A DNA stretch of 41,476 nucleotides, taken from Octopus sinensis. Taxonomy: Eukaryota. Numbering within the stretch: position 1 is the stretch's first letter; each line of letters begins with the position of its first letter. The translations under genes were made by a program, and so were the position numbers. The notes under the pieces were generated by a model, which saw only the letters and a list, made by a program, of their open reading frames with translations, did no database searches and was not told the DNA's origin. This document shows, in pieces, positions 4,321 through 41,280 of the stretch. The DNA is taken from positions 1 to 41,476 of the forward strand of contig NW_021835250.1 in NCBI RefSeq assembly GCF_006345805.1, read 5' to 3'.

Positions 4321-4405
<85 letters not shown>

Positions 4406-4452
4406 GTTTTGCTCCGCCTCTGTTCTGTTTTTGTTTTTTCCAACGGATTTCC

Positions 4453-4544
4453 TATTTCTTCCTGAAGAGAAAGACACAATATGATCCCATTATTCAATCG
4501 GATTTTGGTAAATTGTGCCTTTCGAAACACGTGTAGAATGAATA
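4453..4544 (+). ncRNA. Type-I hammerhead ribozyme motif, intact core
   Basis: tatttcttc CUGAAGA gaaag-a-cacaat...attgtg-c-ctttc GAAA cacgtg UA^gaatgaata. Stem I pairs 8/9, stem II is 11 bp with one mismatch, stem III is the perfect palindrome ACACGUGU; predicted cleavage at 4535/4536. Confidence 0.85.
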
Positions 4545-4590
4545 AAACGATTTCTGTTCAATCTGCGTTCAGCTCCGTTTCTTCATTCAC

Positions 4591-4652
<62 letters not shown>

Positions 4653-5020
4653 GGCGCAGGAGTGGGTGGTGTGGCAAGTAGCTTGTTTACTAACCACATG
4701 GTTCCGGGTTCAGTCCCACTGCGTGGCACCTTGGGCAAGTGTCTTCTGCTATAACCCTTGTGATTGGATTTGGTAGACGGAAACTGAAAAAAGCCCGTCG
4801 AATATATGTATATATATATGTATGTGTGTGTTTGTGTGTCTGTTTGACCCCCTAGCATTGCTTGACAACCGATGCTGGTGTGTTTACGTCCCCGTCACTT
4901 AGCGGTTCGGCAAAAGAGACCGATAGAATAAGTCCCGGGGTTGATTTGCTCGACTAAAGGCGGTGCTCCAGCATGGCCGCAGTCAAATGACTGAAACAAG
5001 TAAAAGAGAAAGAGAGAAAG
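4653..5020 (+). mobile_element. SINE family A (tRNA-derived head), near full length
   Basis: The head ggcgcaggagtgg..gtgtgg..ggttccgggttcagtccc has A/B-box-like sequence, followed by an internal (TA)n and a 3' (aaagag)n tail; multiple copies in the window. Confidence 0.9.
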
Positions 5021-7025: not shown

Positions 7026-7769
7026 GTCCATAGTAGGAGGTTTGTTCAGAAAATAAGAAAAGTCAATCGTTGATCAGTCTGTGGAATGTTTAGTTACATG
7101 TCCACCCGTGACCATCCCGCCATTTTTTCCCATACAGTGTACCCAGAACTAATGATCGAATGTGTCCCCTTCTTTTCTCAAAACAACCACATACGATCAC
7201 ACACACACATACACACACACACATTTACTCTAAAAAACATTACACAACATCACTTTTGGAGGGTCATTAAAAACAAAATCGTAGATACATCGTCAAAAGA
7301 GACAAAAAGTAGGAAAAAAAACGACAAAACGAAAAATAGGCGAAAAAGTGAAAACAGAAAAATAAAAAAACAAGAACAAGAAACTCAAAACTAAAAACAA
7401 AATCAAACGAACGACAAACGATATAATTAAAAGAAATCAAATGACAAACAAAAAAAGTGAAAAAAAACCCCAACGATAATGATTAAAAGCAAACGACAAA
7501 AATAGTCAAAGAAACAACGAAAAAGGAAAGCTATAAAAGTAAAAAAATAAGAAACGAAAAACGAAACGGAGCTAAAACGTTAAAATTAGCGGAAAGTACT
7601 TAAAAGAAAATATTTATAGAAGCAAATCAAAAGTATGAGCAGTCGAAATAATTGTGCTTCTTACGGTGCCGGTTTGTTTACTTAAAAAGTTATTTAAATA
7701 CTTACTTTAAAAGAATAGCCAAACGTTTTTCTCATCATTTACTTCTTCTGGTCGTAATGCAAATATTCC

Positions 7770-7915
7770 AACAACAACAACAACAACAAAAGCAACAGCA
7801 AAAGCAACAACAACGACAACGACAACAACGACCACGACAACAACAACAACAACAACAACAATAATAATAATAATAACAATAATAATAATAAATAATAATA
7901 ATTATTATTATTATT

Positions 7916-10564: not shown

Positions 10565-10654
10565 CATTCGCCTGAAGAAAGCATATTTTTCCCCATGATG
10601 TAATAATTCTATTCATTAATAACAAAAACGCGTTTGAAACAGCTGTAGTGAATG
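10565..10654 (+). ncRNA. Type-I hammerhead ribozyme motif, intact core
   Basis: cattcgc CUGAAGA aagc..(49 nt)..gttt GAAA cagctg UA^gtgaatg. Stem I is 7 bp, stem II 4 bp, stem III the palindrome ACAGCUGU. Confidence 0.72.
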
Positions 10655-10699
10655 AACCAAATTCTCTATCTATCTTATCTATCAATCAATCAATCAATC

Positions 10700-10730
<31 letters not shown>

Positions 10731-16467: not shown

Positions 16468-17512
16468 CGTCTGTGTGAGTGTGTGTGTGTGCTGATGGAT
16501 GCAAGTATAGTAGTGTGCGTTAGTACGGAGACGTGTTTGAATGGTTATAAATTTGCTTCACGACCATGGCATCCCAGTTTCGATCCCACAGCGTGGTAGC
16601 TTGAACAGTGGTCATTTTCTATAACCTCAGGTGAAACTGGGTAGACAGAAATTCTATAGAAGTCTGTCGAGTGGATTGAACTCGTAGTTCGAAAATACGG
16701 ACTTGCTACACACTGTGTCACGTTGATCCTACCTAAGAATTGCATTAAGGTGACCCTCACGTGCTAATTTAAAGAGCAGTGTTAATTCTGTTTATCGAAC
16801 ACCCAAATCCTCATCGTCGAAACCGATGGAGAACCTCGTGATACATCTGTAAATATGTGTGTGTGTATACATACTTATCTAGTTATGTACACACGCATAT
16901 ATATATATATCTGTATACACACATACATATGTGTGTGTATTCATATATATCCACGTACATACATACATTTATATATATACAAAAATATATGTATATCCAA
17001 ATGTGTGTATGTCTATGCATATTTGTATGTATTTGTGTGGAGGATGTTTTCATATGTACATTCGTTTGCGCATGACTGCGCAAGCTTGTTTTTCCTGTGA
17101 TAACTAACACCAGCTAATTCATAGAGTAATAAAACACATCATTAAAAATTATACTGAAATATATTATGTCAAAAATATTTTTTTCAAATGAGATGATATA
17201 TATATATGTTTATGTATAACAAGCAGCCAAGTGTAAAAATTGCGTATTACAAGGGATATTTATTAATTCTACCAAATGTTAAACGACAGATATAACCTAA
17301 AAAATCCTAAGTGATTGGTGTTATTTTCTAGAAATAAAATAAAAGGAGAGAGAGAAGAAACATTTGCTCGAGACTACAAGGTTGTAAGGCTAGGATTTAT
17401 CTGCATTTTCAAAGCTTAGAACAAACTGGTTTCTACTCTATGTCTGTGTATCAGATGTGCTAGGGATCACTGTGTCATGTCTGAATAATTGTACCTCTAT
17501 CCTTATATATAT

Positions 17513-17680
17513 AGGCGTAGACGTGGTTGTGCGGTTAAGAGGTTCGTTTTGCAACCATGTAGTTCCGCGTTCATTCCTACTGCTTGGCACCTTGGGCAGA
17601 GTGTCTTCTACTATCGCTCCGGGTCGACCAATGCCTTATGAGTAGATTTGGTAGATGGAAGCTCTATGGAAATCCGTCGC

Positions 17681-17729
<49 letters not shown>

Positions 17730-17930: not shown

Positions 17931-18684
17931 TATTCATCCATACAGCTTTGGTTCTTTGAAATTCACTCCTTGCGTATGTCCTTCTTGCAATTACGAACAT
18001 GCACCGACTTTAGAGGAACATTAGCGACATCAGACTTACCTGTTTTTGAGAACTTACAAAATTCTTGGACAATGCCCCTTCCTCCAAACCTATCATCTAT
18101 TAATTACCTCCAGACACTATTACCCTGTGTAACAATGTTTTTTTTTTATTTGGTCAGTAAATAATATTTCTTATTTACCTCTATCTATAAATCAAACGAA
18201 GTGACTACTATACCCGTCAAACTTTGCTTTTGTGACCTGGACATCATTCATTTGAAACTGGCCTATTTTTCCATTACATTTCAGACAGATTCAGCGCTGA
18301 GTTGCTGAAGCAGAAATATCGTTATAGCAAATACTCTGCTTAATGCTAGATTTGCTTGTCTGTTGCTTGACCTTAACCACTTGAGCCTGTCCTTTAGAAG
18401 CTGACACTATGTGCATCTATGATCATGAGCAATGATAGTGGGGAGCATTATAACCATATATTAAGAAGGATTCTTTGGGGTTTGAATAAATGTAACAAAA
18501 GCAAAGTTTGAAGGAAATATTAGCCATTTTTCATACTTCCTAAGGGGGTCAGCAAAAAGGGGAAATAATAGCTGCTACCCAAGGGCAAAAATCGTGTTAC
18601 ACAGTGTTACATTTGTTTCAGCCGTTGATTTTCTCGTTTGTTTTCGCTAAGCATTTATGAATGCTCTCCCTTTGCTCTCGACAG

Positions 18685-18856
18685 AAAGGTTTCATGCGGA
18701 CCAACGATGAGGATGTCTACATTGAACCAGTCAACAGCGAAACGCAGGTTGCAAAGAAGGGACGGCCACATTTCATCTACTCATGTAAGGAATCTCACCA
18801 TCAGAAGAAGGCTGTGGAGACCAATGATGAAGACCTTCGAAATACACATATCAAAA
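18685..18856 (+). CDS. ADAMTS2/3/14-like: ADAMTS exon B: prodomain
   Basis: Acceptor ctctccctttgctctcgacag|. Translates KGFMRTNDEDVYIEPVNSETQVAKKGRPHFIYSCKESHHQKKAVETNDEDLRNTHIK, with the typical G-x-x-x-x-x-x-E-x-Y-x-I-E-P...P-H-x-I-Y pattern. Donor A|GTAAGA; phase 0 to 1. Confidence 0.92.
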
Positions 18857-18935
18857 GTAAGACATCGTTGCTAAATTGTTTTTGTGCCATTTTCAAATGT
18901 ATTTGTGCTAAACAACATTTTTCTACTCCCACCTC

Positions 18936-19335
18936 TCTCTTTTACTTTTTTACTCTTTTACTCTTTTACTTGTTTCAGTCTTTTGACTGCGGCCATGCTG
19001 GAGCACCGCCTTTAGTCGAGCAAATCGACCCTGGGACTTATTCTTTGTAAGCCCAGTACTTATTCTATCGGTCTCTTTTGCCGAACCGCTAAGTGACGGG
19101 GACGTAAGCACACCAGCATCGGTTGTCAAGCAATGCTAGGGGACAAACACTTATATATACATACATATATACGACGGGCTTCTTTCAGTTTCCGTCTACC
19201 AAATCCACTCACAAGGCATTGGTCGGCCCGGGGCTATAGTAGAAGACACTTGCCCAAGATGCCACACAGTGGGACTGAACCCGGAACCATGTGGTTGGTT
19301 AGCAAGCTACTTACCACACAGCCACTCCTGCGCCT
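18936..19335 (-). mobile_element. SINE family A, full length
   Basis: Reverse complement of the 4653-5020 family. Confidence 0.9.
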
Positions 19336-19402
19336 CTGTATTACTTAACTGTGATAAACTATAATACTTGATTTGTGTGTTTTACCTGATCCTCTGAAAG
19401 TG

Positions 19403-19670
19403 CATGGCTCAGTAGTTAGAGGGTTGGGTTCACAATCGTGAGGTAGTGAGTTCGATTCCCGGACCGGGCTGCATGTTGTTTTCTTGAACAAAACACTTTA
19501 TTTCACGTTGCTCCAGTTCACTCAGGTGAGTTTACGTCCCCGTAACATAGCGGTTCGGCAAAAGGGGCGATAGAATAAGGACCAGGTTCAAAAATAAGTA
19601 CTGGGGTCGATTCATTCGACTAAAAATTCAAGGCAGTGCCCCAGCATGACCGCAATGAAGCAGATAAAAG
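19403..19670 (+). mobile_element. Chimeric SINE: family C/D-type tRNA head with family A 3' tail
   Basis: catggctcagtagttagag...gagttcgattcccggaccggg head, then tttacgtccccgtaacatagcggttcggcaaaag tail. Confidence 0.65.
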
Positions 19671-19699
19671 TGAAGAAATGAAATGACGAGTTTCATTTC

Positions 19700-19794
19700 T
19701 TTACTTCTCTGAAGAGAAGATTACATTGTTTTACACCAATTTATTCCTTTGGAATAATATCAGTGATATCTTCGAAACATGTGTCGGAAGTAAA
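19700..19794 (+). ncRNA. Type-I hammerhead ribozyme motif, intact, sense within ADAMTS intron
   Basis: tttacttct CUGAAGA gaagat...atcttc GAAA catgtg UC^ggaagtaaa. Stem I is 9 bp (extendable), stem II is 6 bp with internal hairpin ttattcc/ggaataa, stem III is ACAUGUGU (self-complementary with G-U); GUC cleavage at 19785/19786. Confidence 0.87.
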
Positions 19795-19837
19795 AGAACT
19801 TGAATTACACCTGCGTTAAACTCCATTTATATGTATA

Positions 19838-19922
<85 letters not shown>

Positions 19923-19995
19923 CATACATATATATACACATATATACTCACACTTATGCATGTACATATATATACATATATATACATATATATAT

Positions 19996-20054
<59 letters not shown>

Positions 20055-20277
20055 CATGCATATATATATATACATACATATACGCACATATTTACATATA
20101 TACTTATATACTTATACATATAAATATATATATATGTGTGTGTGTGTGTAATATTGTATGCGTGTACTTTCAGTGTCTGCCTCCCTCAAAAGAAAATCAT
20201 TTTTCACTTTCCTTTCTTTTTATTTCTTCTTCATATTGTTTCCGTATTTTATTCTGTTTTGTTTTAACCCCATACAG

Positions 20278-20453
20278 GAAGTAGGCACTATAAGATGAAA
20301 ACCCAGAGACAGCACCATCTACGGCAACATCGTGTACGAAGGGACATACCCGTTAACTATTACCTCGAAGTTTTGTTGGCTACCGATAACACTTTGGTAA
20401 AGTTCCACGGTAAGAGCCACCTGGAGCAGTACTTGTTGGGAATTATAAACATC
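20278..20453 (+). CDS. ADAMTS2/3/14-like: ADAMTS exon C: furin site RVRR (20331-20342) and start of catalytic domain
   Basis: Acceptor ttttaaccccatacag|. Translates (R)SRHYKMKTQRQHHLRQHRVRRDIPVNYYLEVLLATDNTLVKFHGKSHLEQYLLGIINI. Donor ATC|GTAAGT; phase 1 to 0. Too short for the ORF track. Confidence 0.93.
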
Positions 20454-20845
20454 GTAAGTCTCCATTGAATACTACTGATGCTATTAACGTGGTTATATTT
20501 ATTGTCGTTGCTGTTTTTGTTGTTCATGATTGTGGTTCGTTATTATCGTAGTCATTGCCGTTATCATTATCATCATTATCGCCGCCAACGTTGTCATCAT
20601 CGTTCTCTTAGTTGCGGATTAAATGTCGATAGTATTTAGATCATGGTCGTTTCACGTTGTCAACGGAAATCCAGAGATTCAGATGAATATCCGCTCCCTT
20701 CCCAGCGTCATCTATCCGTTCGGAGATCGTGATTGATCTTTTGAGTTTCGTTATACCTTTGATATACCTTTCCAATGTCTGTCACTGAAGAATACATTGT
20801 ATGCGAGAGGTTTTGCCAGGCTTCACCAACAATAGAATAAAGCGC

Positions 20846-21508
20846 GAATTATGAGGGATGATTCCTTAAAGAATTATGAGGATGATTCCTTAAAGAATTA
20901 TGAGGGATGATTCCTTAAAGAATTATGAGGGATGATTCCTTAAAGAATTATGAGGATGATTCCTTAAAGAATTATGAGGGATGATTCCTTAAAGAATTAT
21001 GAGGGATGATTCCTTAAAGAATTATGAGGGATGATTCCTTAAAGAATTATGAGGGATGTTTCCTTAAAGAATTATGAGGATGTTCCTTAAAGAATTATGA
21101 GGGATGATTCCTTAAAGATTATGAGGGATGATTCCTTAAAGAATTATGAGGATGATTCCTTAAAGAATTATGAGGGATGTTTCCTTAAAGAATTATGAGG
21201 GATGATTCCTTAAAGAATTATGAGGGATGTTTCCTTAAAGAATTATGAGGGATGATTCCTTAAAGAATTATGAGGGATGTTTCCTTAAAGAATTATGAGG
21301 GATGATTCCTTAAAGAATTATGAGGGATGTTTCCTTAAAGAATTATGAGGGATGATTCCTTAAAGAATTATGAGGATGATTCCTTAAAGAATTATGAGGA
21401 TGATTCCTTAAAGAATTATGAGGATGATTCCTTAAAGAATTATGAGGATGATTCCTTAAAGAATTATGAGGATGATTCCTTAAAGAATTATGAGGATGAT
21501 TCCTTAAA
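20846..21508. repeat. Minisatellite, 24-25 bp unit GAATTATGAGG(G)ATG(A/T)TTCCTTAAA, about 27 copies
   Basis: Head-to-tail units with no unique spacers. Confidence 0.97.
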
Positions 21509-21930: not shown

Positions 21931-22514
21931 GCTTCAACACACGAACTCATATAAAGAATCTTGCAAACCAAATCCAAAAACGAAATAGTTTAATATATAA
22001 CTTCACATCAAAACATGCATTAATATGTGAGTGGGTGAAATAGAAGGAGAGTGAAGGAATAAGAGATGTGTAAAAGTGATAGAGAAAGAAGTATAAAGAA
22101 TAGTTTTAAAACTCTGTCTTCTTAACATGTTTGAGCAAGCGACGTTCAAACCGTTCCACAACGCATTCCAAATTCTTTATAGAAGAAATTTCATTTTCCC
22201 TGCGTCAAATCAAGAAAAATCATAAGAAAAACTTTGAAAAAAAAGACACTAAAACCAACGCCGACTTACCCACCCTGTTCATCCACCCTGCCATATCACA
22301 ACATTTTTTTTTTCTCAGCCAGTTGTCTCGACAACACTGCTCACTCCCACCCTCCAACACCGCGTACTAACAAGTTGCATTCCGAGGAGAGAATGTATGC
22401 CCGAGAGTGCGTTTGTTAGTGTACGCAATATGTGAGATTGCGTGCGAATGTCTGTGTTTGTGCATATGCATGTGTTGTCTACGCTTATTTTTTGTTCTTC
22501 TCACTGTTGTTGCA

Positions 22515-22654
22515 GCATTGTTGTTGTTCTTCTTCTTCTTCTTCTTGGCCTTCTTCTTCGCCTTCTTCTTGGCCTTCTTCTTGGCCTTCTTCTTCTTCCT
22601 CTTCTTCTTCGCCTTGTTGTTGCTGTTGTTGTTGTTGTTGTTGTTGTTGTTCTT

Positions 22655-22685
<31 letters not shown>

Positions 22686-22872
22686 TTATTATTATTATAT
22701 TATTATTATTATTAATATTATTATTATTATTATTATATTATTATCATTATTATTACTATTATTATTATTATTATCATTATTATTGTTATTATCCTTATTA
22801 TTACTATTACTATCATCATCATCATCATTATCATCATTATTATTATTATTATCATTATTATTATTATTATTA

Positions 22873-22924
<52 letters not shown>

Positions 22925-23289
22925 CATTATTATCATTATTATTATTATTATCATTATTATTATTATTTATTATTATCATTATTATTATTATTATTATTAT
23001 TATTTATTATTATTATTATTATTATTATATGAAGTATTATTTTTATTGCCTGCTTTTATTGCACTACCAAACGCTGCTCTGTGGACCTTGGGAAAGGGCT
23101 GTTTTTGGTTGTCATCGTAATTATTGCTGTTGTTGTTGTTATTGTTATGGTTATTAATATTACAATTATCAGTAGTAGTAGTTGTAGTAGTATTATTAGT
23201 AGTTGTAGACCTCAAGTAACAGCAAGTTGGATGTTTTTGCTGTGGATATCCCCCTCCCCACCCTTCGCCCTTGCGGCAAATAAATAAAA

Positions 23290-23345
<56 letters not shown>

Positions 23346-23413
23346 TTACTACTACTACTACTACAACAACTACTACTAGTACTGCTACTGCTACTACCGC
23401 CACCACCACCACC

Positions 23414-23447
<34 letters not shown>

Positions 23448-23694
23448 TCGTTGTTTCTATTCCTACGACTATTTCGGCTTTGGACCCACTGCTATAGCAC
23501 TCAAAGCATAAATATTATTAAAACACCCACCCTTACCGCCACGAGCACTACCACCCCCACTACGACTACAACTATTACTACTACAACCACTACCACTACT
23601 ATTACTACTACTGCCGCCGCTGCTGGTGCTGAAGCTACTTCTAGTACCACTGCCATTAATTCTGTGATAACTGTTCCTGCTATGACCATTACTA

Positions 23695-23785
<91 letters not shown>

Positions 23786-23981
23786 GACTACTGCTACTGC
23801 TGCTACTACTACTGCATATCAAAAGATATGATTAAATTACTATAATTAAAGTGTCCTGAAATCTTGTCACCATATGTGAAAGAGGCAACCTTCAGCAGCC
23901 ACTCACACCAGCGCCACCACCACCAACAATAACAACAACAGCGGAAAACATCACTGTCACCACCACCTCCACTAGTACTAC

Positions 23982-24030
<49 letters not shown>

Positions 24031-24160
24031 CACTAGCATCACCAATACAATTCTACTACTACTACTGGAACCACAACCGCCACCATATTCATCTTCACCA
24101 CAACCACCACCACTACTACAATTACTATTATACTATATATATGTGTTATATATATATATA
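22515..24160. repeat. About 1.6 kb compound trinucleotide repeat field with short unique islands
   Basis: CTT, GTT, TTA, CTA, CCA, GCT and GAT runs. Confidence 0.95.
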
Positions 24161-24534: not shown

Positions 24535-24630
24535 TGACTATCTGGTGAAGCATCATTACATATTTAAACGGATTTGATTATTCTTGAAAAACTTACTTTT
24601 ATTAATGAAGCGGAAACGGCTGTAATTTAT
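24535..24630 (+). ncRNA. Decayed hammerhead motif
   Basis: CUGGUGA (A6G) at 24542, stem II agcatcatt/aatgaagcg pairs 7/9, then GAAA cggctg UA at 24613-24624. Stem I is poor. Confidence 0.4.
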
Positions 24631-24929: not shown

Positions 24930-25080
24930 ACGGCGGGCTTCCACACTCTGTCCGTCAACCAAATTCACTCACAAGACATTGGACGGCCCGGGGTTATAGT
25001 AGAAGACACAGGCCCGAGGTGCCACGCAGTAGGACTGAACCCAAACCATGTAGTTATGAAACAAGCTTCTTAACCACACA
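24930..25080 (-). mobile_element. SINE family A, 5' fragment
   Basis: Matches the reverse complement of the family-A head region. Confidence 0.75.
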
Positions 25081-27641: not shown

Positions 27642-27757
27642 TGCATACGATCGTTTCAAATGGTAACACCAACATGTAAGAAACATAGGAAAAAATTAAA
27701 CTAATTTTAATTATAATTAAATTAATTTAATTACATATTACCATTCTCCTCAGTGCA
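27642..27757 (-). ncRNA. Type-I hammerhead ribozyme motif, intact, antisense to ADAMTS
   Basis: Minus strand reads tgca CUGAGGA gaatggtaa...ttaccattt GAAA cgatcg UA^tgca. Stem I is 4 bp, stem II 9 bp, stem III the perfect palindrome ACGAUCGU. Confidence 0.82.
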
Positions 27758-30130: not shown

Positions 30131-30811
30131 TTTATTATTATTATTTTTTTTTTCTTTCAAATTTGCTTCCATTTCTTGCCGAGTGTCTTCCCGACTCCTA
30201 GGGCAAAGAAACTCATAGTATACATTGGTAGGCCATTAAACTAAACTCAATAGTTCGTTCGCTTTTTTTTATTTTTAAGTTAAATTAAAATACATGGGTA
30301 GAAATAGTTCTCACATCGACAATGCTCTTCTCAATACGTGTGATGTACCAGTTAAGACAATCTTTTGCACTTCTTGCAGAGATGGTAAGCCAGGGATCAT
30401 TCTCATATAATTTTCGGTTCCCTTCTTGATCATTCCTAGTGCTCCTACGATCACTGGTATTGTTAAAACCGCCTTGAGATGCCACATTTTCTCAATTTCA
30501 ATGAGCAGGTCTTTATATTTTCTGAGCTTGTCAAACTCTTTCGCTGAGATATTATGATCACAGGGGATGCTCATGTCGATCAATAAGCAAACTTTATTGT
30601 TTTGGTCTTTCACAACAATATCTGGTTTATTGGCTTTGATGGTTCGGTCTGTATGTACTGGAAAGTCCCACAGAATCGTTACATTTTCTCCTTCAGTTAC
30701 AGCTTCAGGGTGGTGATTATACCACTTGTCGGCAGTTTTGATATTGTAATGTCGACTTATTATCCAGTGTAGATATTGGGCCAACTCTGTCATGTCTTAA
30801 TTTATACTCCA
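30131..30811 (-). mobile_element. 5'-truncated R4/Dong-like non-LTR retrotransposon (restriction-like endonuclease domain)
   Basis: EYKLRHDRVG(frameshift)QYLHW...ILWDFPVHTD..IKANKPDIVV....CLLIDMSIP...KLRKYKDL...IPVIVGALG is the PD-x-D type RLE domain. The 5' end abuts (TAA)n and there is a 3' A/TAA tail. Confidence 0.9.
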
Positions 30812-37669: not shown

Positions 37670-37800
37670 ATGGACACATACAAACATATACTCAAGCACA
37701 CACGCATGTCGGTACACAAGCCAATGGAAGTTCTAGGTCCAACATAGACAAGCTTCCATGTATGGTGCTTGCGTAAAATAAGAGCACAACTAAGTTAACA

Positions 37801-37887
37801 GTTCCCTACAGCTGTTTCAGGCGCATTATTTTTTATTGATGAATCGTTCGATTACCTGATGAAAAAACATGTTTTCTTCAGATTACT
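37801..37887 (-). ncRNA. Decayed hammerhead motif (inverted partner of 38070-38145)
   Basis: Minus strand reads CUGAAGA aaac...gcct GAAA cagctg UA gggaac. The core is intact but stems I and II are eroded. Confidence 0.45.
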
Positions 37888-38069
37888 GAAAATTCTTCTG
37901 GGGTAAAAAAAAAACTACAAGATGTGGATTGACCTTCTCGATTAGGGATCATTGAAGAGAGTGGAAACACATCGAGGGTTAGCTAGGTTTAACCGACTAT
38001 CAATGATACCTAACTGAGAGGCTTAGTCCGCATCTTGTGGTATTTCTTTTCTCTTAACCCAAATTTTAA

Positions 38070-38145
38070 TCACCTGAAGAAAACGATTTTTAATGATGTA
38101 ATCGGATGATTCACCAATAAAAAGGGTCTGAAACAGCTGTAGTGA
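38070..38145 (+). ncRNA. Type-I hammerhead motif, near-intact, sense in ADAMTS intron
   Basis: tcac CUGAAGA aaac...gtct GAAA cagctg UA^gtga. Stem I is 4 bp, stem II pairs 3/4, stem III is ACAGCUGU. Confidence 0.62.
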
Positions 38146-38164
38146 CCTTTAAAACATTTGTATG

Positions 38165-40806: not shown

Positions 40807-41067
40807 CTCTTTTACTCTTTTACTCTTTTACTTGTTTCAGTCATTTGACTGCGACCATGCTTGAGCACCGCCTTTAGTCGAGCAACTCGACCCCAGGACT
40901 TATTCTTTGTAAGCCTAGTACTTATTCTATCGGTCTCTTTTGCCGAACCGCTAAGTGACGGGGACGTAAATACACCCAAGCATCGGTTGTCAAGTGATGT
41001 TGGGGAGACAAACACATACATACAAAAACACACCCCACACACACACACACACACGCATATATATATA

Positions 41068-41117
<50 letters not shown>

Positions 41118-41280
41118 TATACGACGGGCTTCTTTCAGTTTTCGTCTACCAAATCCACTCACAAAGCTTTTCGGTCCGAGGCTATAGTGTAGAACACTTG
41201 CCCAAGGTGCCACGCAGTGGGAATGAACCCGGACTATGTGGTTGGTAAGCAGCTACTTATCACACAGCCACTCCTACGCC
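40807..41280 (-). mobile_element. SINE family A, full length
   Basis: Reverse complement of the 4653-5020 family, with an expanded internal microsatellite. Confidence 0.9.

What the first reader, a model, noticed from the sequence alone, without database searches (positions are those of the whole stretch)
19700..19794. Fully canonical hammerhead in sense orientation inside the ADAMTS intron before the furin-site exon
Seen: all core positions intact (CUGAAGA, GAAA, GUC), a 9-bp stem I that extends further with bulges (ttca/tgaa), a 6-bp stem II carrying a branched insert, and stem III ACAUGUGU. It lies on the pre-mRNA strand about 490 nt upstream of acceptor 20278. Inference: cleavage would cut the nascent transcript in intron 18857-20277 and could affect splicing order or mRNA yield. 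Stem III dimer dependence might keep it silent unless a second copy (trans partner) is present, a possible concentration-dependent switch.
Basis: partly seen in the sequence, partly recalled or inferred. Interest (0 to 1): 0.7.

Follow-up and report, generated by a model that had tools for sequence, protein, structure and literature searches.

The report
Retroelement-derived hammerhead ribozyme relic in intron
The hammerhead ribozyme motif is really there and is not a chance match, but it is one of about ten leftovers of a ribozyme-carrying mobile element scattered through this stretch of octopod DNA, and this copy is predicted to be folded shut, so it is most likely an ordinary transposon relic and not a control device for the ADAMTS gene.

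Summary
Window 19700-19794 (+) has an intact type I hammerhead core: CUGAAGA, GAAA, GUC, with cleavage after C19785. Helix I is 9 bp, the base of helix II is 6 bp, and helix III is the self-complementary ACAUGUGU. It lies in the sense strand of the ADAMTS-like intron 18857-20277. None of 2000 shuffles produced a comparable motif.

The regulatory reading is not supported.
- The window holds 10 hammerhead helix-III signatures (0.6 expected). Six have intact cores, and all six carry an unusually long helix II (49-89 nt).
- This copy aligns end to end with a sibling at 4402-4590 (67% identity, z 9.4).
- Its 3' tail recurs in Octopus sinensis next to (TA)n.
- Several copies abut (TA)n microsatellites, and two form a head-to-head inverted pair. 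These are hallmarks of Penelope-like/retrozyme elements.
- A 19-nt inverted repeat just upstream, not seen in the one alignable sibling copy, forms a 17-bp hairpin. It sequesters the 5' strand of helix I and costs about 7 kcal/mol more.
- There is no tandem partner in the intron.
- Rfam Hammerhead_1 scores 22.2 bits, below the gathering score of 34.

Verdict: a solitary, probably inactive retroelement relic. Orthologous introns could not be reached, so conservation is untested.

The parts
18857..20277 (+). Host intron of the ADAMTS-like gene (phase 1). It separates the prodomain exon ending at 18856 from the exon that carries the RVRR furin site and starts at 20278.
   Evidence: Donor GTAAGA and acceptor ACAG|GA read. 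Downstream exons match ADAMTS-1/-5/-4 catalytic domains in the PDB.
19655..19835 (+). The whole inserted element, about 175-180 nt. It comprises a 5' inverted-repeat arm, the hammerhead and a 3' tail. On the left it is bounded by an inverted SINE fragment that ends at 19654, and on the right by a TA-rich microsatellite.
   Evidence: Self-BLAST puts the repeat borders at 19654. Sequence read. End-to-end alignment with the sibling at 4402-4590 gives 67% identity, z 9.4.
19666..19684 (+). 5' arm, an inverted copy of 19690-19708. With the 5' strand of helix I it forms a 17-19 bp hairpin (loop 19685-19689) and competes with the catalytic fold. The sibling copy c4462 does not have it.
   Evidence: The MFE of 19655-19835 (-42.2 kcal/mol, z -3.7) contains this hairpin instead of helix I. 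The hairpin alone is -18.9 kcal/mol, and the hammerhead-compatible ensemble is -34.3 against -45.2 kcal/mol. The c4462 fold has no such hairpin.
19690..19708 (+). Helix I, 5' strand: 9 contiguous pairs at 19700-19708, plus a bulged extension at 19691-19699.
19709..19715 (+). Core box CUGAAGA (C3-A9).
19716..19773 (+). Long helix II, 58 nt. The basal 6 bp are 19716-21 with 19768-73, a second stem is 19724-28 with 19761-65, and the apical hairpin is 19741-47 with 19751-57.
   Evidence: The fold of the insert alone is -12.3 kcal/mol, z -3.3. The sibling copies show the same architecture.
19774..19785 (+). GAAA (G12-A15.1), the self-complementary helix III ACAUGUGU (19777-19784) and C17. The predicted scissile bond is 19785/19786.
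   Evidence: Duplex energy of the helix III homodimer is -6.0 kcal/mol.
19786..19806 (+). Helix I, 3' strand: 9 bp at 19786-19794, then the bulged extension.
19795..19835 (+). 3' tail of the element, containing ATTACACCTGCGTTA (19804-19818). The tail is shared with the copy at 4402-4590 and with an Octopus sinensis insertion.
   Evidence: Tail-only alignment to c4462: z 6.4, 0/1000 shuffles. To O. sinensis L003 7598-7645(-): BLAST 87% over 39 nt and aligner z 9.1.
19836..20135 (.). TA-rich compound microsatellite ((TA)n, (GATA)n, (TACA)n). It is the probable insertion target or flank of the element.
   Evidence: The same juxtaposition is seen at the sibling copies 4462, 10572 and 38130 and in O. 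sinensis.
4402..4590 (+). Sibling element c4462, flanked by (TA)n on both sides. It has CUGAAGA, a 55-nt helix II, GAAA, ACACGUGU and GUA.
   Evidence: Rfam Hammerhead_1 scores 15.4 bits.
10565..10700 (+). Hammerhead relic c10572: CUGAAGA, 57-nt helix II, ACAGCUGU, GUA, 7-bp helix I. A tail follows, then (TA)n.
27646..27753 (-). Hammerhead relic c27646m, antisense to the gene: CUGAGGA, 89-nt helix II, ACGAUCGU, GUA.
37795..38161 (.). Head-to-head inverted pair of hammerhead elements. The arms are 37795-37955 (-) and 38000-38152 (+), about 72% identical, and both carry CUGAAGA ... GAAACAGCUGUA.

Best explanation
Window 19655-19835 is a solitary copy, about 175-180 nt long, of the 3'-terminal, ribozyme-bearing module of a hammerhead-carrying retroelement. 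The element type is Penelope-like element (PLE) terminal repeat or non-LTR retrozyme monomer. It inserted at a (TA)n microsatellite inside the ADAMTS-like intron.

In the parent element the type I hammerhead cuts the element's own more-than-unit-length transcript at GUC|G. The short, self-complementary helix III lets two neighbouring copies pair into an active dimer.

This copy is only carried along in the host pre-mRNA. Its core is intact, but three things argue against activity:
1. It has no partner copy in the intron.
2. As a monomer its helix III is 2 bp.
3. An inverted duplication of 19 nt at its 5' end, absent from the one alignable sibling copy, traps the 5' strand of helix I in a 17-bp hairpin that forms first during transcription.

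I therefore expect little or no self-cleavage and no dedicated role in ADAMTS expression.

Shown here: the motif, its non-random nature, the repeat family, the shared tail, the microsatellite association, and the predicted competing fold. Inferred: the assignment to PLE/retrozyme, the origin of the 5' arm as an insertion by-product, and the inactivity.
For: - Motif and statistics: (0 of 2000 shuffles).
- Family: 10 GAAAC-NNNN-GUH palindromic helix-III sites against 0.60 +/- 0.78 expected, with a maximum of 4 in 1000 shuffles. Six have intact CUGANGA, and all six have a 49-89 nt helix II.
- Pairing across the six copies: 78.9% of cells paired against 61.6% in shuffles (0/500). 13 of 19 pairs show changes on both sides. 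Slid controls give 31-44%.
- Homology beyond the ribozyme: c19709 against c4462 is 67% identical over 133 nt, z 9.4. The tails alone give z 6.4. The tail recurs in an O. sinensis insert flanked by (TA)n on both sides.
- PLE-like hallmarks: (TA)n flanks and 30-60 nt tails, and a head-to-head inverted pair about 310 bp apart. These match published descriptions: PMC8557442 for (TA)n targets, 30-40 bp tails, inverted 5'-truncated copies and a hammerhead near the 3' end; PMC4209133 for solo motifs as truncated PLEs and dual motifs 100-700 bp apart on opposite strands.
- Inactivity: the competing hairpin. The hammerhead-compatible ensemble is 10.9 kcal/mol above the total in context, against 3.6 kcal/mol without the 5' arm. 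Single PLE hammerheads showed no detectable cleavage in vitro (PMC4209133; PMC6765202).
- No orientation bias against the sense strand: 6 sites are sense and 4 antisense.
- Penelope-like elements are an abundant, old repeat class in octopus genomes (PMC13282606, PMC8967140).
Against: - No reverse transcriptase or GIY-YIG open reading frame lies next to any copy in the window or in the O. sinensis locus. The PLE assignment therefore rests on architecture, not on homology to a curated element.
- Three copies have similar lengths (about 175-190 nt). That fits a discrete short non-autonomous element better than random 5' truncation of a 3-kb PLE.
- No copy in the window is in tandem, so the retrozyme hallmark is missing too.
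- This copy is the best preserved of the ten. That could reflect youth, luck or selection.
- Invertebrate retrozyme hammerheads with a 2-bp helix III plus tetraloop do cleave efficiently as monomers (PMC7229834), so the helix III argument for inactivity is weak on its own.
- Nearest-neighbour folding ignores tertiary contacts, helicases and RNA-binding proteins.
Confidence: 0.75

Rival explanations
1. Same origin, but still catalytically active. The copy self-cleaves at some rate in the ADAMTS pre-mRNA as a monomer. This has no consequence, because the cut falls in an intron that is discarded anyway.
For: All invariant core positions, the G10.1-C11.1 pair and the favourable GUC triplet are intact. 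Without the 5' arm, the fold of the shorter stretch 19690-19805 shows the extended helix I and helix II. Helix III has 2 bp plus a tetraloop, as in invertebrate retrozyme hammerheads that cleave well as monomers (PMC7229834).
Against: The upstream hairpin is transcribed first and is about 7 kcal/mol more costly to displace. The 58-nt continuous helix II leaves no loop at the usual position for the loop-loop contact needed at physiological Mg2+. Changing stem lengths lowers activity by orders of magnitude (PMC3088659). Single PLE-type hammerheads were inactive in vitro (PMC4209133).
Confidence: 0.15
2. One reading: an exapted intronic ribozyme. Its cleavage, possibly gated by dimerisation with a second copy or by opening of the upstream hairpin, tunes splicing order or the yield of ADAMTS mRNA. 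Known parallels are the amniote intronic hammerheads and the CPEB3 ribozyme.
For: Sense orientation, 492 nt upstream of the acceptor. It is the best preserved of the ten relics. A hairpin/hammerhead alternative fold could in principle act as a switch. Intronic ribozymes that may act on pre-mRNA processing are on record (PMC6765202; PMC10919898).
Against: It is repeat-derived, and siblings lie in several introns on both strands with no sign of avoiding the sense strand. There is no partner copy in the same intron. The nearest sense copies are 9 kb upstream and 4.8 kb downstream, in other introns. No conservation data could be obtained. The 5' arm is absent from the sibling c4462, so it looks like an insertion by-product and not a designed switch.
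Confidence: 0.07
3. A chance match to the hammerhead descriptor in AT-rich sequence.
For: Rfam Hammerhead_1 stays below its gathering score (22.2 against 34 bits).
Against: 0 of 2000 shuffles reach the observed quality. Helix-III signatures are enriched about 16-fold. Compensatory changes occur across copies. Homology extends outside the ribozyme.
Confidence: 0.01

Closest known systems
Hammerhead ribozymes in the terminal repeats (pLTRs) of Penelope-like elements (Cervera & de la Pena 2014, PMC4209133; Craig et al. 2021, PMC8557442)
   Same: - Type I topology with a small, self-complementary helix III and a larger than usual helix II.
- Mostly dispersed as solo motifs, with occasional pairs 100-700 bp apart on opposite strands.
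- Located near the 3' end of the element, followed by a short tail.
- Insertion at (TA)n microsatellites.
- High sequence variability within one genome, with compensatory changes.
   Different: - Helix II here is far longer (49-89 nt, a multi-stem hairpin) than the 6-8 bp described.
- There is no unpaired nucleotide between A9 and 10.1.
- No RT/GIY-YIG ORF was found beside any copy.
- Three copies have similar lengths of about 175-190 nt.
Metazoan non-LTR retrozymes (Cervera & de la Pena 2020, PMC7229834; Li et al. 2026 preprint, 10.64898/2026.07.22.740005)
   Same: - Short (170-400 nt), AT-rich, non-coding units with a type I hammerhead.
- In invertebrates, helix III is 2 bp plus a palindromic tetraloop.
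- Dispersed monomers occur genome-wide, including in introns.
- They are proposed to derive from PLE pLTRs.
   Different: No tandem head-to-tail array exists in the window. circRNA expression is untested. The canonical 4-bp helix II with loop-loop contacts is replaced by a long hairpin.
Schistosoma Sm-alpha/Sj-alpha SINE-like hammerhead elements, and the newt and cave-cricket satellite hammerheads
   Same: Repeat-borne type I hammerheads with a weak helix III that favours dimeric cleavage.
   Different: They belong to different repeat families and have a canonical short helix II. No Pol III promoter was sought or seen here.
Conserved intronic hammerheads of amniotes (HH9/HH10 in RECK, C10orf118, DTNB) and the intronic CPEB3 HDV-like ribozyme
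   Same: Sense-strand self-cleaving motif inside an intron of a protein-coding gene.
   Different: Those are single-copy, conserved across orders of vertebrates and active as monomers. This one is a member of a dispersed repeat family, its conservation is unknown, and it is predicted to be misfolded.

Membership tests
Hammerhead ribozyme, type I (Rfam RF00163) | Invariant core: C3 U4 G5 A6 N7 G8 A9, G12 A13 A14, the A15.1-U16.1 pair, and H17 at the cleavage site. | tested here: met
   CUGAAGA at 19709-15, GAAA at 19774-77, U19784, C19785.
Hammerhead ribozyme, type I (Rfam RF00163) | Three helices around the core, with helix I open and helices II and III closed. | tested here: met
   Helix I is 9 bp, the base of helix II is 6 bp within a 58-nt hairpin, and helix III is 2 bp plus a tetraloop.
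Hammerhead ribozyme, type I (Rfam RF00163) | Score at or above the curated gathering threshold of the covariance model. | tested here: not met
   22.2 bits against 34, and the hit is seen only in a 171-nt scan (E 0.0023). The whole-window gathering scan finds nothing. The alignment has to span a 54-nt insertion in helix II.
Hammerhead ribozyme, type I (Rfam RF00163) | Helices supported by compensatory changes among relatives. | tested here: met
   Six copies in the window: 13 of 19 pairs change on both sides, and 78.9% of cells pair against 61.6% in shuffles (0/500). Caveat: four copies were ascertained with a descriptor that required 3-4 inner pairs, and all six were selected for a palindromic helix III.
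Hammerhead ribozyme, type I (Rfam RF00163) | The catalytic fold is the favoured structure in the native transcript. | tested here: not met
   The MFE of 19655-19835 pairs 19668-19684 with 19690-19706. The hammerhead-compatible ensemble is -34.3 against -45.2 kcal/mol.
Hammerhead ribozyme, type I (Rfam RF00163) | Site-specific self-cleavage giving 2',3'-cyclic phosphate and 5'-OH ends. | not testable with these tools
   Needs in vitro transcription or end mapping.
Penelope-like element (pLTR hammerhead) | Adjacent ORF encoding an RT plus a GIY-YIG endonuclease. | tested here: not met
   No such ORF or motif appears in six-frame translations of the window or of O. sinensis L003. At best these are solo or non-autonomous fragments.
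Penelope-like element (pLTR hammerhead) | Type I hammerhead with a small palindromic helix III near the 3' end of the element, followed by a short tail. | tested here: met
   The published description is in PMC4209133 and PMC8557442.
Penelope-like element (pLTR hammerhead) | Insertion bias for microsatellites, and inverted 5'-truncated partner copies. | tested here: met
   (TA)n flanks copies 4462, 10572, 19709 and 38130 and the O. sinensis copy. The head-to-head pair lies at 37795-38161.
Penelope-like element (pLTR hammerhead) | Sequence homology to a curated PLE consensus (Repbase/Dfam). | not testable with these tools
   No eukaryotic repeat library or octopus genome search is available.
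Non-LTR retrozyme | Head-to-tail tandem repeats of a 170-400 nt unit, each with a hammerhead. | tested here: not met
   No direct repeat of the element exists in or near 19655-19835, and there is no tandem copy anywhere in the window.
Non-LTR retrozyme | Expression as linear and circular monomer RNAs. | not testable with these tools
   Needs RNA data.
Conserved intronic regulatory ribozyme (HH9/HH10- or CPEB3-like) | Single-copy locus, not part of a dispersed repeat. | tested here: not met
   Siblings and tail homologues are shown.
Conserved intronic regulatory ribozyme (HH9/HH10- or CPEB3-like) | Conservation at the orthologous intron across species. | not testable with these tools
The protein search found nothing. 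Exact-ORF look-ups found nothing. The DNA scans gave 0 hits.

The most novel reading that the evidence does not exclude
The octopod hammerheads seen here form an undescribed structural class: a type I core with a 49-89 nt multi-stem helix II in place of the usual 4-8 bp stem-loop. This best-preserved copy may have been co-opted as a self-inhibited intronic ribozyme. Its 5' hairpin (19666-19708) would have to be opened, for example by a helicase or by A-to-I editing of the A-rich stem, which is plausible in a coleoid, before the ADAMTS pre-mRNA is cut.
Probability: 0.04. Interest if true: 0.6.

Novelty: new member of a known kind. Interest (0 to 1): 0.2.

Why it matters
On its own this matters little. 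It adds one more repeat-borne hammerhead to the many thousands already known in invertebrate genomes, and it warns against reading gene regulation into a well-formed ribozyme motif without checking copy number and flanking structure.

Two points are mildly useful:
1. Hammerhead relics are very dense in this octopod region (about one per 4 kb) and share an unusually long helix II. That is worth a genome-wide description.
2. Sense-strand copies sit in several introns of one gene. That makes this locus a convenient natural test of whether intronic hammerheads are tolerated because they are inactive or because intronic cleavage is harmless.

Tried and rejected
- Rfam at gathering thresholds on the whole window gave no hit. 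At E<=10 the list is swamped by microsatellite-driven miRNA-like matches.
- Orthologue hunt. A 330-aa concatenate of the ADAMTS exons found no protein at E<=1e-10 among 5.8 billion. Exact-ORF look-ups for 20295-20468, 18661-19050 and 19805-20119(-) found nothing on record.
- Family hunt in public DNA. Two metagenome scans with hammerhead-specific patterns gave 0 hits. The prokaryotic genome scan gave only a chance 21-mer inside a Halobacteriovorax ORF that starts MAIETYFSEEK, which I read, from recalled similarity only and without a test, as a hypoxanthine phosphoribosyltransferase gene.
- Harvesting octopod DNA through retroelement and SINE peptides. This gave one O. sinensis locus (useful), three loci from non-octopod ENA assemblies with no SINE and no hammerheads, and one Argonauta hians locus with no member of this family.
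- Type III reading, with the upstream hairpin as a closed helix I: rejected. Position 16.1 would be A, and helix III would not pair (inspection).
- Tandem or terminal-redundancy reading, with the 5' arm as the start of a previous 120-nt unit: rejected. Similarity between the 5' arm and the post-cleavage sequence is limited to the about 20 nt that must both complement the 5' strand of helix I. The conserved tail (ATTACACCTGCGTTA) has no counterpart upstream.
- The O. sinensis copy shares only the tail. Its upstream part is not alignable (z about 0), so it does not tell whether the 5' arm is a family feature.
- A search for RT or GIY-YIG motifs in six-frame translations found nothing.

Full report
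**1. The observation**

The sequence at 19700-19794 (+) reads UUUACUUCU-CUGAAGA-GAAGAU...AUCUUC-GAAA-CAUGUG-UC-GGAAGUAAA.
- All invariant hammerhead positions are present: C3-A9 at 19709-19715, G12-A14 at 19774-19776, the A15.1/U16.1 pair at 19777/19784, and C17 at 19785.
- The G10.1-C11.1 pair closes helix II, and the cleavage triplet is GUC.
- Helix I has 9 contiguous pairs. The pair next to the core is a G-U wobble. A bulged extension appears in the fold of 19690-19805.
- Helix II is a 58-nt unbranched hairpin (6 + 5 + 7 bp with internal loops; -12.3 kcal/mol, z -3.3), not a branched insert.
- As a monomer, helix III is 2 bp plus a tetraloop. ACAUGUGU is self-complementary (8 bp with two G-U pairs; -6.0 kcal/mol as a duplex).

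Rfam's Hammerhead_1 model aligns over its full length but scores 22.2 bits against a gathering score of 34. The hit is visible only in a 171-nt scan, and the alignment has to span a 54-nt insertion in helix II.

A descriptor scan of 2000 dinucleotide-preserving shuffles of the window never produced a motif with helix I >=6 bp, helix II >=4 bp and a compact helix III. The real window has two. The motif is therefore real and not a chance match.

**2. Gene context**

The donor GTAAGA starts at 18857. The acceptor is ACAG|GA and the exon starts at 20278, phase 1. The downstream exons match ADAMTS-1/-5/-4 catalytic domains in the PDB at E about 1e-12. The hammerhead is on the pre-mRNA strand, 492 nt upstream of the acceptor.

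**3. It is a member of a repeat family**

Hammerhead 3' halves of the form GAAAC-NNNN-GU[A/C/U] with a palindromic helix III occur 10 times in the window. The expectation is 0.60 +/- 0.78, with a maximum of 4 in 1000 shuffles.
- Positions on the + strand: 4524, 10636, 19774, 24613, 38130, 39638.
- Positions on the - strand: 37818, 27657, 24338, 11613.
- Six of them keep an intact CUGANGA box upstream. Three others carry a single core substitution: CUGGUGA, CUGAAGG, CUGAAAA.
- All six intact ones have an unusually long helix II of 49-89 nt. It folds as a long hairpin in the better-preserved copies.

On a register-fixed alignment of the six copies (A3), 78.9% of helix cells pair against 61.6% in shuffles (0/500). 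13 of 19 pairs show changes on both sides. Slid controls give 31-44%. There is a caveat: four copies were found with a descriptor that demanded 3-4 inner pairs, and all six were chosen for a palindromic helix III.

The copies at 10572, 37818(-) and 38130 are homologous by BLAST (69-77% identity). The last two form a head-to-head inverted pair, with arms at 37795-37955 and 38000-38152.

The finding's own copy has no BLAST-level homologue in the window. It does align end to end with the element at 4402-4590: 67% identity over 133 nt, z 9.4. The 3' tails outside the ribozyme give z 6.4 on their own.

The same tail (GAAAGUAAAA..AUUACACCUGCGUUA) also ends an insert of about 175 nt, flanked on both sides by (TA)n, in Octopus sinensis (L003 7598-7776, minus strand). 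BLAST gives 87% over 39 nt and the aligner gives z 9.1. In that copy the ribozyme part has decayed beyond alignment.

The window's SINE (18945-19341) is 80-90% identical to copies in that O. sinensis locus and 86% identical to a fragment in Argonauta hians.

**4. What kind of element**

Four copies in the window (4462, 10572, 19709, 38130) and the O. sinensis copy end 30-60 nt after the cleavage site at a (TA)n microsatellite. Copy 4462 and the O. sinensis copy have (TA)n on both sides.

The combination of features matches published descriptions of hammerheads in Penelope-like elements and their non-autonomous derivatives:
- a type I hammerhead with a small palindromic helix III near the 3' end;
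- a short tail;
- microsatellite targets;
- mostly solo copies;
- occasional inverted pairs a few hundred bp apart.

The sources are PMC4209133, PMC8557442, PMC6765202, PMC7229834 and the 2026 preprint 10.64898/2026.07.22.740005. Penelope-like elements are an abundant and old repeat class in octopus genomes (PMC13282606, PMC8967140).

Three things are missing:
- no RT/GIY-YIG ORF lies next to any copy;
- there is no tandem array;
- no comparison with a curated consensus was possible with these tools.

I therefore file it as 'PLE/retrozyme-type' by architecture and not as a proven member.

**5. Would this copy work?**

Immediately upstream, 19666-19684 is an inverted copy of 19690-19708. When the 45 upstream nucleotides are included, the MFE (-42.2 kcal/mol, z -3.7) pairs 19668-19684 with 19690-19706, and helix I does not form.

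Constrained folding gives these ensemble energies:

| Context | Hammerhead-compatible ensemble | All structures | Penalty |
|---|---|---|---|
| 19655-19835, with the 5' arm | -34.3 kcal/mol | -45.2 kcal/mol | 10.9 kcal/mol |
| 19690-19835, without the 5' arm | -25.4 kcal/mol | -29.1 kcal/mol | 3.6 kcal/mol |

The arm thus costs about 7 kcal/mol more, and it is transcribed first. The sibling at 4402-4590 has no such arm. I read it as a by-product of this insertion, a small snap-back or inverted duplication. That is an inference.

Further points against activity:
- No second hammerhead lies in the intron. The nearest sense-strand copies are 9 kb upstream and 4.8 kb downstream, in other introns.
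- A single PLE-type hammerhead showed no detectable cleavage in vitro, and dimers cleaved only weakly (PMC4209133).
- The long continuous helix II leaves no loop at the position where loop-loop contacts normally confer activity at physiological Mg2+. Altering stem lengths lowers activity by orders of magnitude (PMC3088659).

Against this, invertebrate retrozyme hammerheads with a 2-bp helix III do cleave as monomers (PMC7229834), and thermodynamic folding ignores proteins and tertiary structure. I therefore keep a 15% rival in which the copy still cleaves, harmlessly.

**6. Is its intactness a sign of selection?**

If the 5' arm was a perfect inverted copy at insertion, its three non-Watson-Crick positions in 38 nt suggest about 8% divergence since then. 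At that level the chance of keeping 13 specified core bases is roughly 0.6. That is my own estimate from very small numbers. One well-preserved copy among ten relics is also what neutral decay predicts.

The 67% identity to the sibling includes compensatory helix changes. Most of that divergence therefore arose in active source elements, before insertion.

Six of the ten sites are on the sense strand of the gene, so there is no visible avoidance of sense insertions.

**7. Verdict**

- The regulatory interpretation is unsupported.
- The most likely account is a solitary, probably inactive relic of a hammerhead-bearing retroelement at a (TA)n microsatellite in an intron.

The decisive tests could not be run here: genome-wide copy number and consensus, presence at the orthologous intron, and cleavage assays with and without the 5' arm.

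Novelty: a new member of a known kind. The long-helix-II architecture and the high local density of relics are the only mildly unusual aspects.

Noticed in passing
window 4462-4535(+), 10572-10647(+), 27646-27753(-), about 37802-37881(-), about 38070-38145(+); decayed sites at 24613(+), 39638(+), 11613(-), 24338(-): Besides the copy in the finding, nine further hammerhead-derived sites lie in the window. Five have an intact CUGANGA box and a long helix II. Three others carry a single core substitution.
   Followed up: yes
window 37795-37955(-) and 38000-38152(+): Two hammerhead elements form a head-to-head inverted repeat: about 160-nt arms, about 72% identical, 45 nt apart. The right-hand arm ends at (TA)n. 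This is the arrangement described for inverted 5'-truncated PLE copies.
   Followed up: partly
window 18945-19341(+), 19525-19654 (inverted fragment), 40807-41280, 2057-2197, 4646-5019(-), 17507-17705(-), 24951-25080: An abundant SINE-like repeat. Copies are 76-91% identical within the window, 80-90% identical to copies in Octopus sinensis (L003), and 86% identical to a fragment in Argonauta hians (L007). This places the window in an octopod genome.
   Followed up: partly
window 30314-30796(-): A 161-aa open frame (DMTELAQYLHW...PDIVVKD...LIDMSIPCDHN...). It is 73% identical to O. sinensis LOC115230721 and has more than 100 relatives, some beside RVT_1 ORFs. It looks like the C-terminal part of a retrotransposon protein, not a PLE endonuclease.
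   Followed up: partly
window 20823-21500: A minisatellite with a 25-nt period (about 25 copies) in the intron after the furin-site exon. In one frame it reads ...DDSLKNYEDDSLKNYE....
   Followed up: no
window 22400-24100: More than 1.5 kb of low-complexity trinucleotide and homopolymer-like repeats. The open frames are made of runs of L, S, Y, I and T. It lies inside the long intron between 20460 and 28016.
   Followed up: no
L007 (Argonauta hians) 15593(+), 15313(-), 14956(-): Three copies of a repeat containing ...GAGUUCUGAUAUUGAACGAAACUAUAGUC.... It has a hammerhead-like 3' half with a palindromic helix III, but no canonical CUGANGA box.
   Followed up: no
L003 (Octopus sinensis VCDQ01003308.1) 7598-7776(-): An insert of about 175 nt flanked on both sides by (TA)n. 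Its last 47 nt are homologous to the tail of the element in the finding. The part where the hammerhead should be has decayed.
   Followed up: yes
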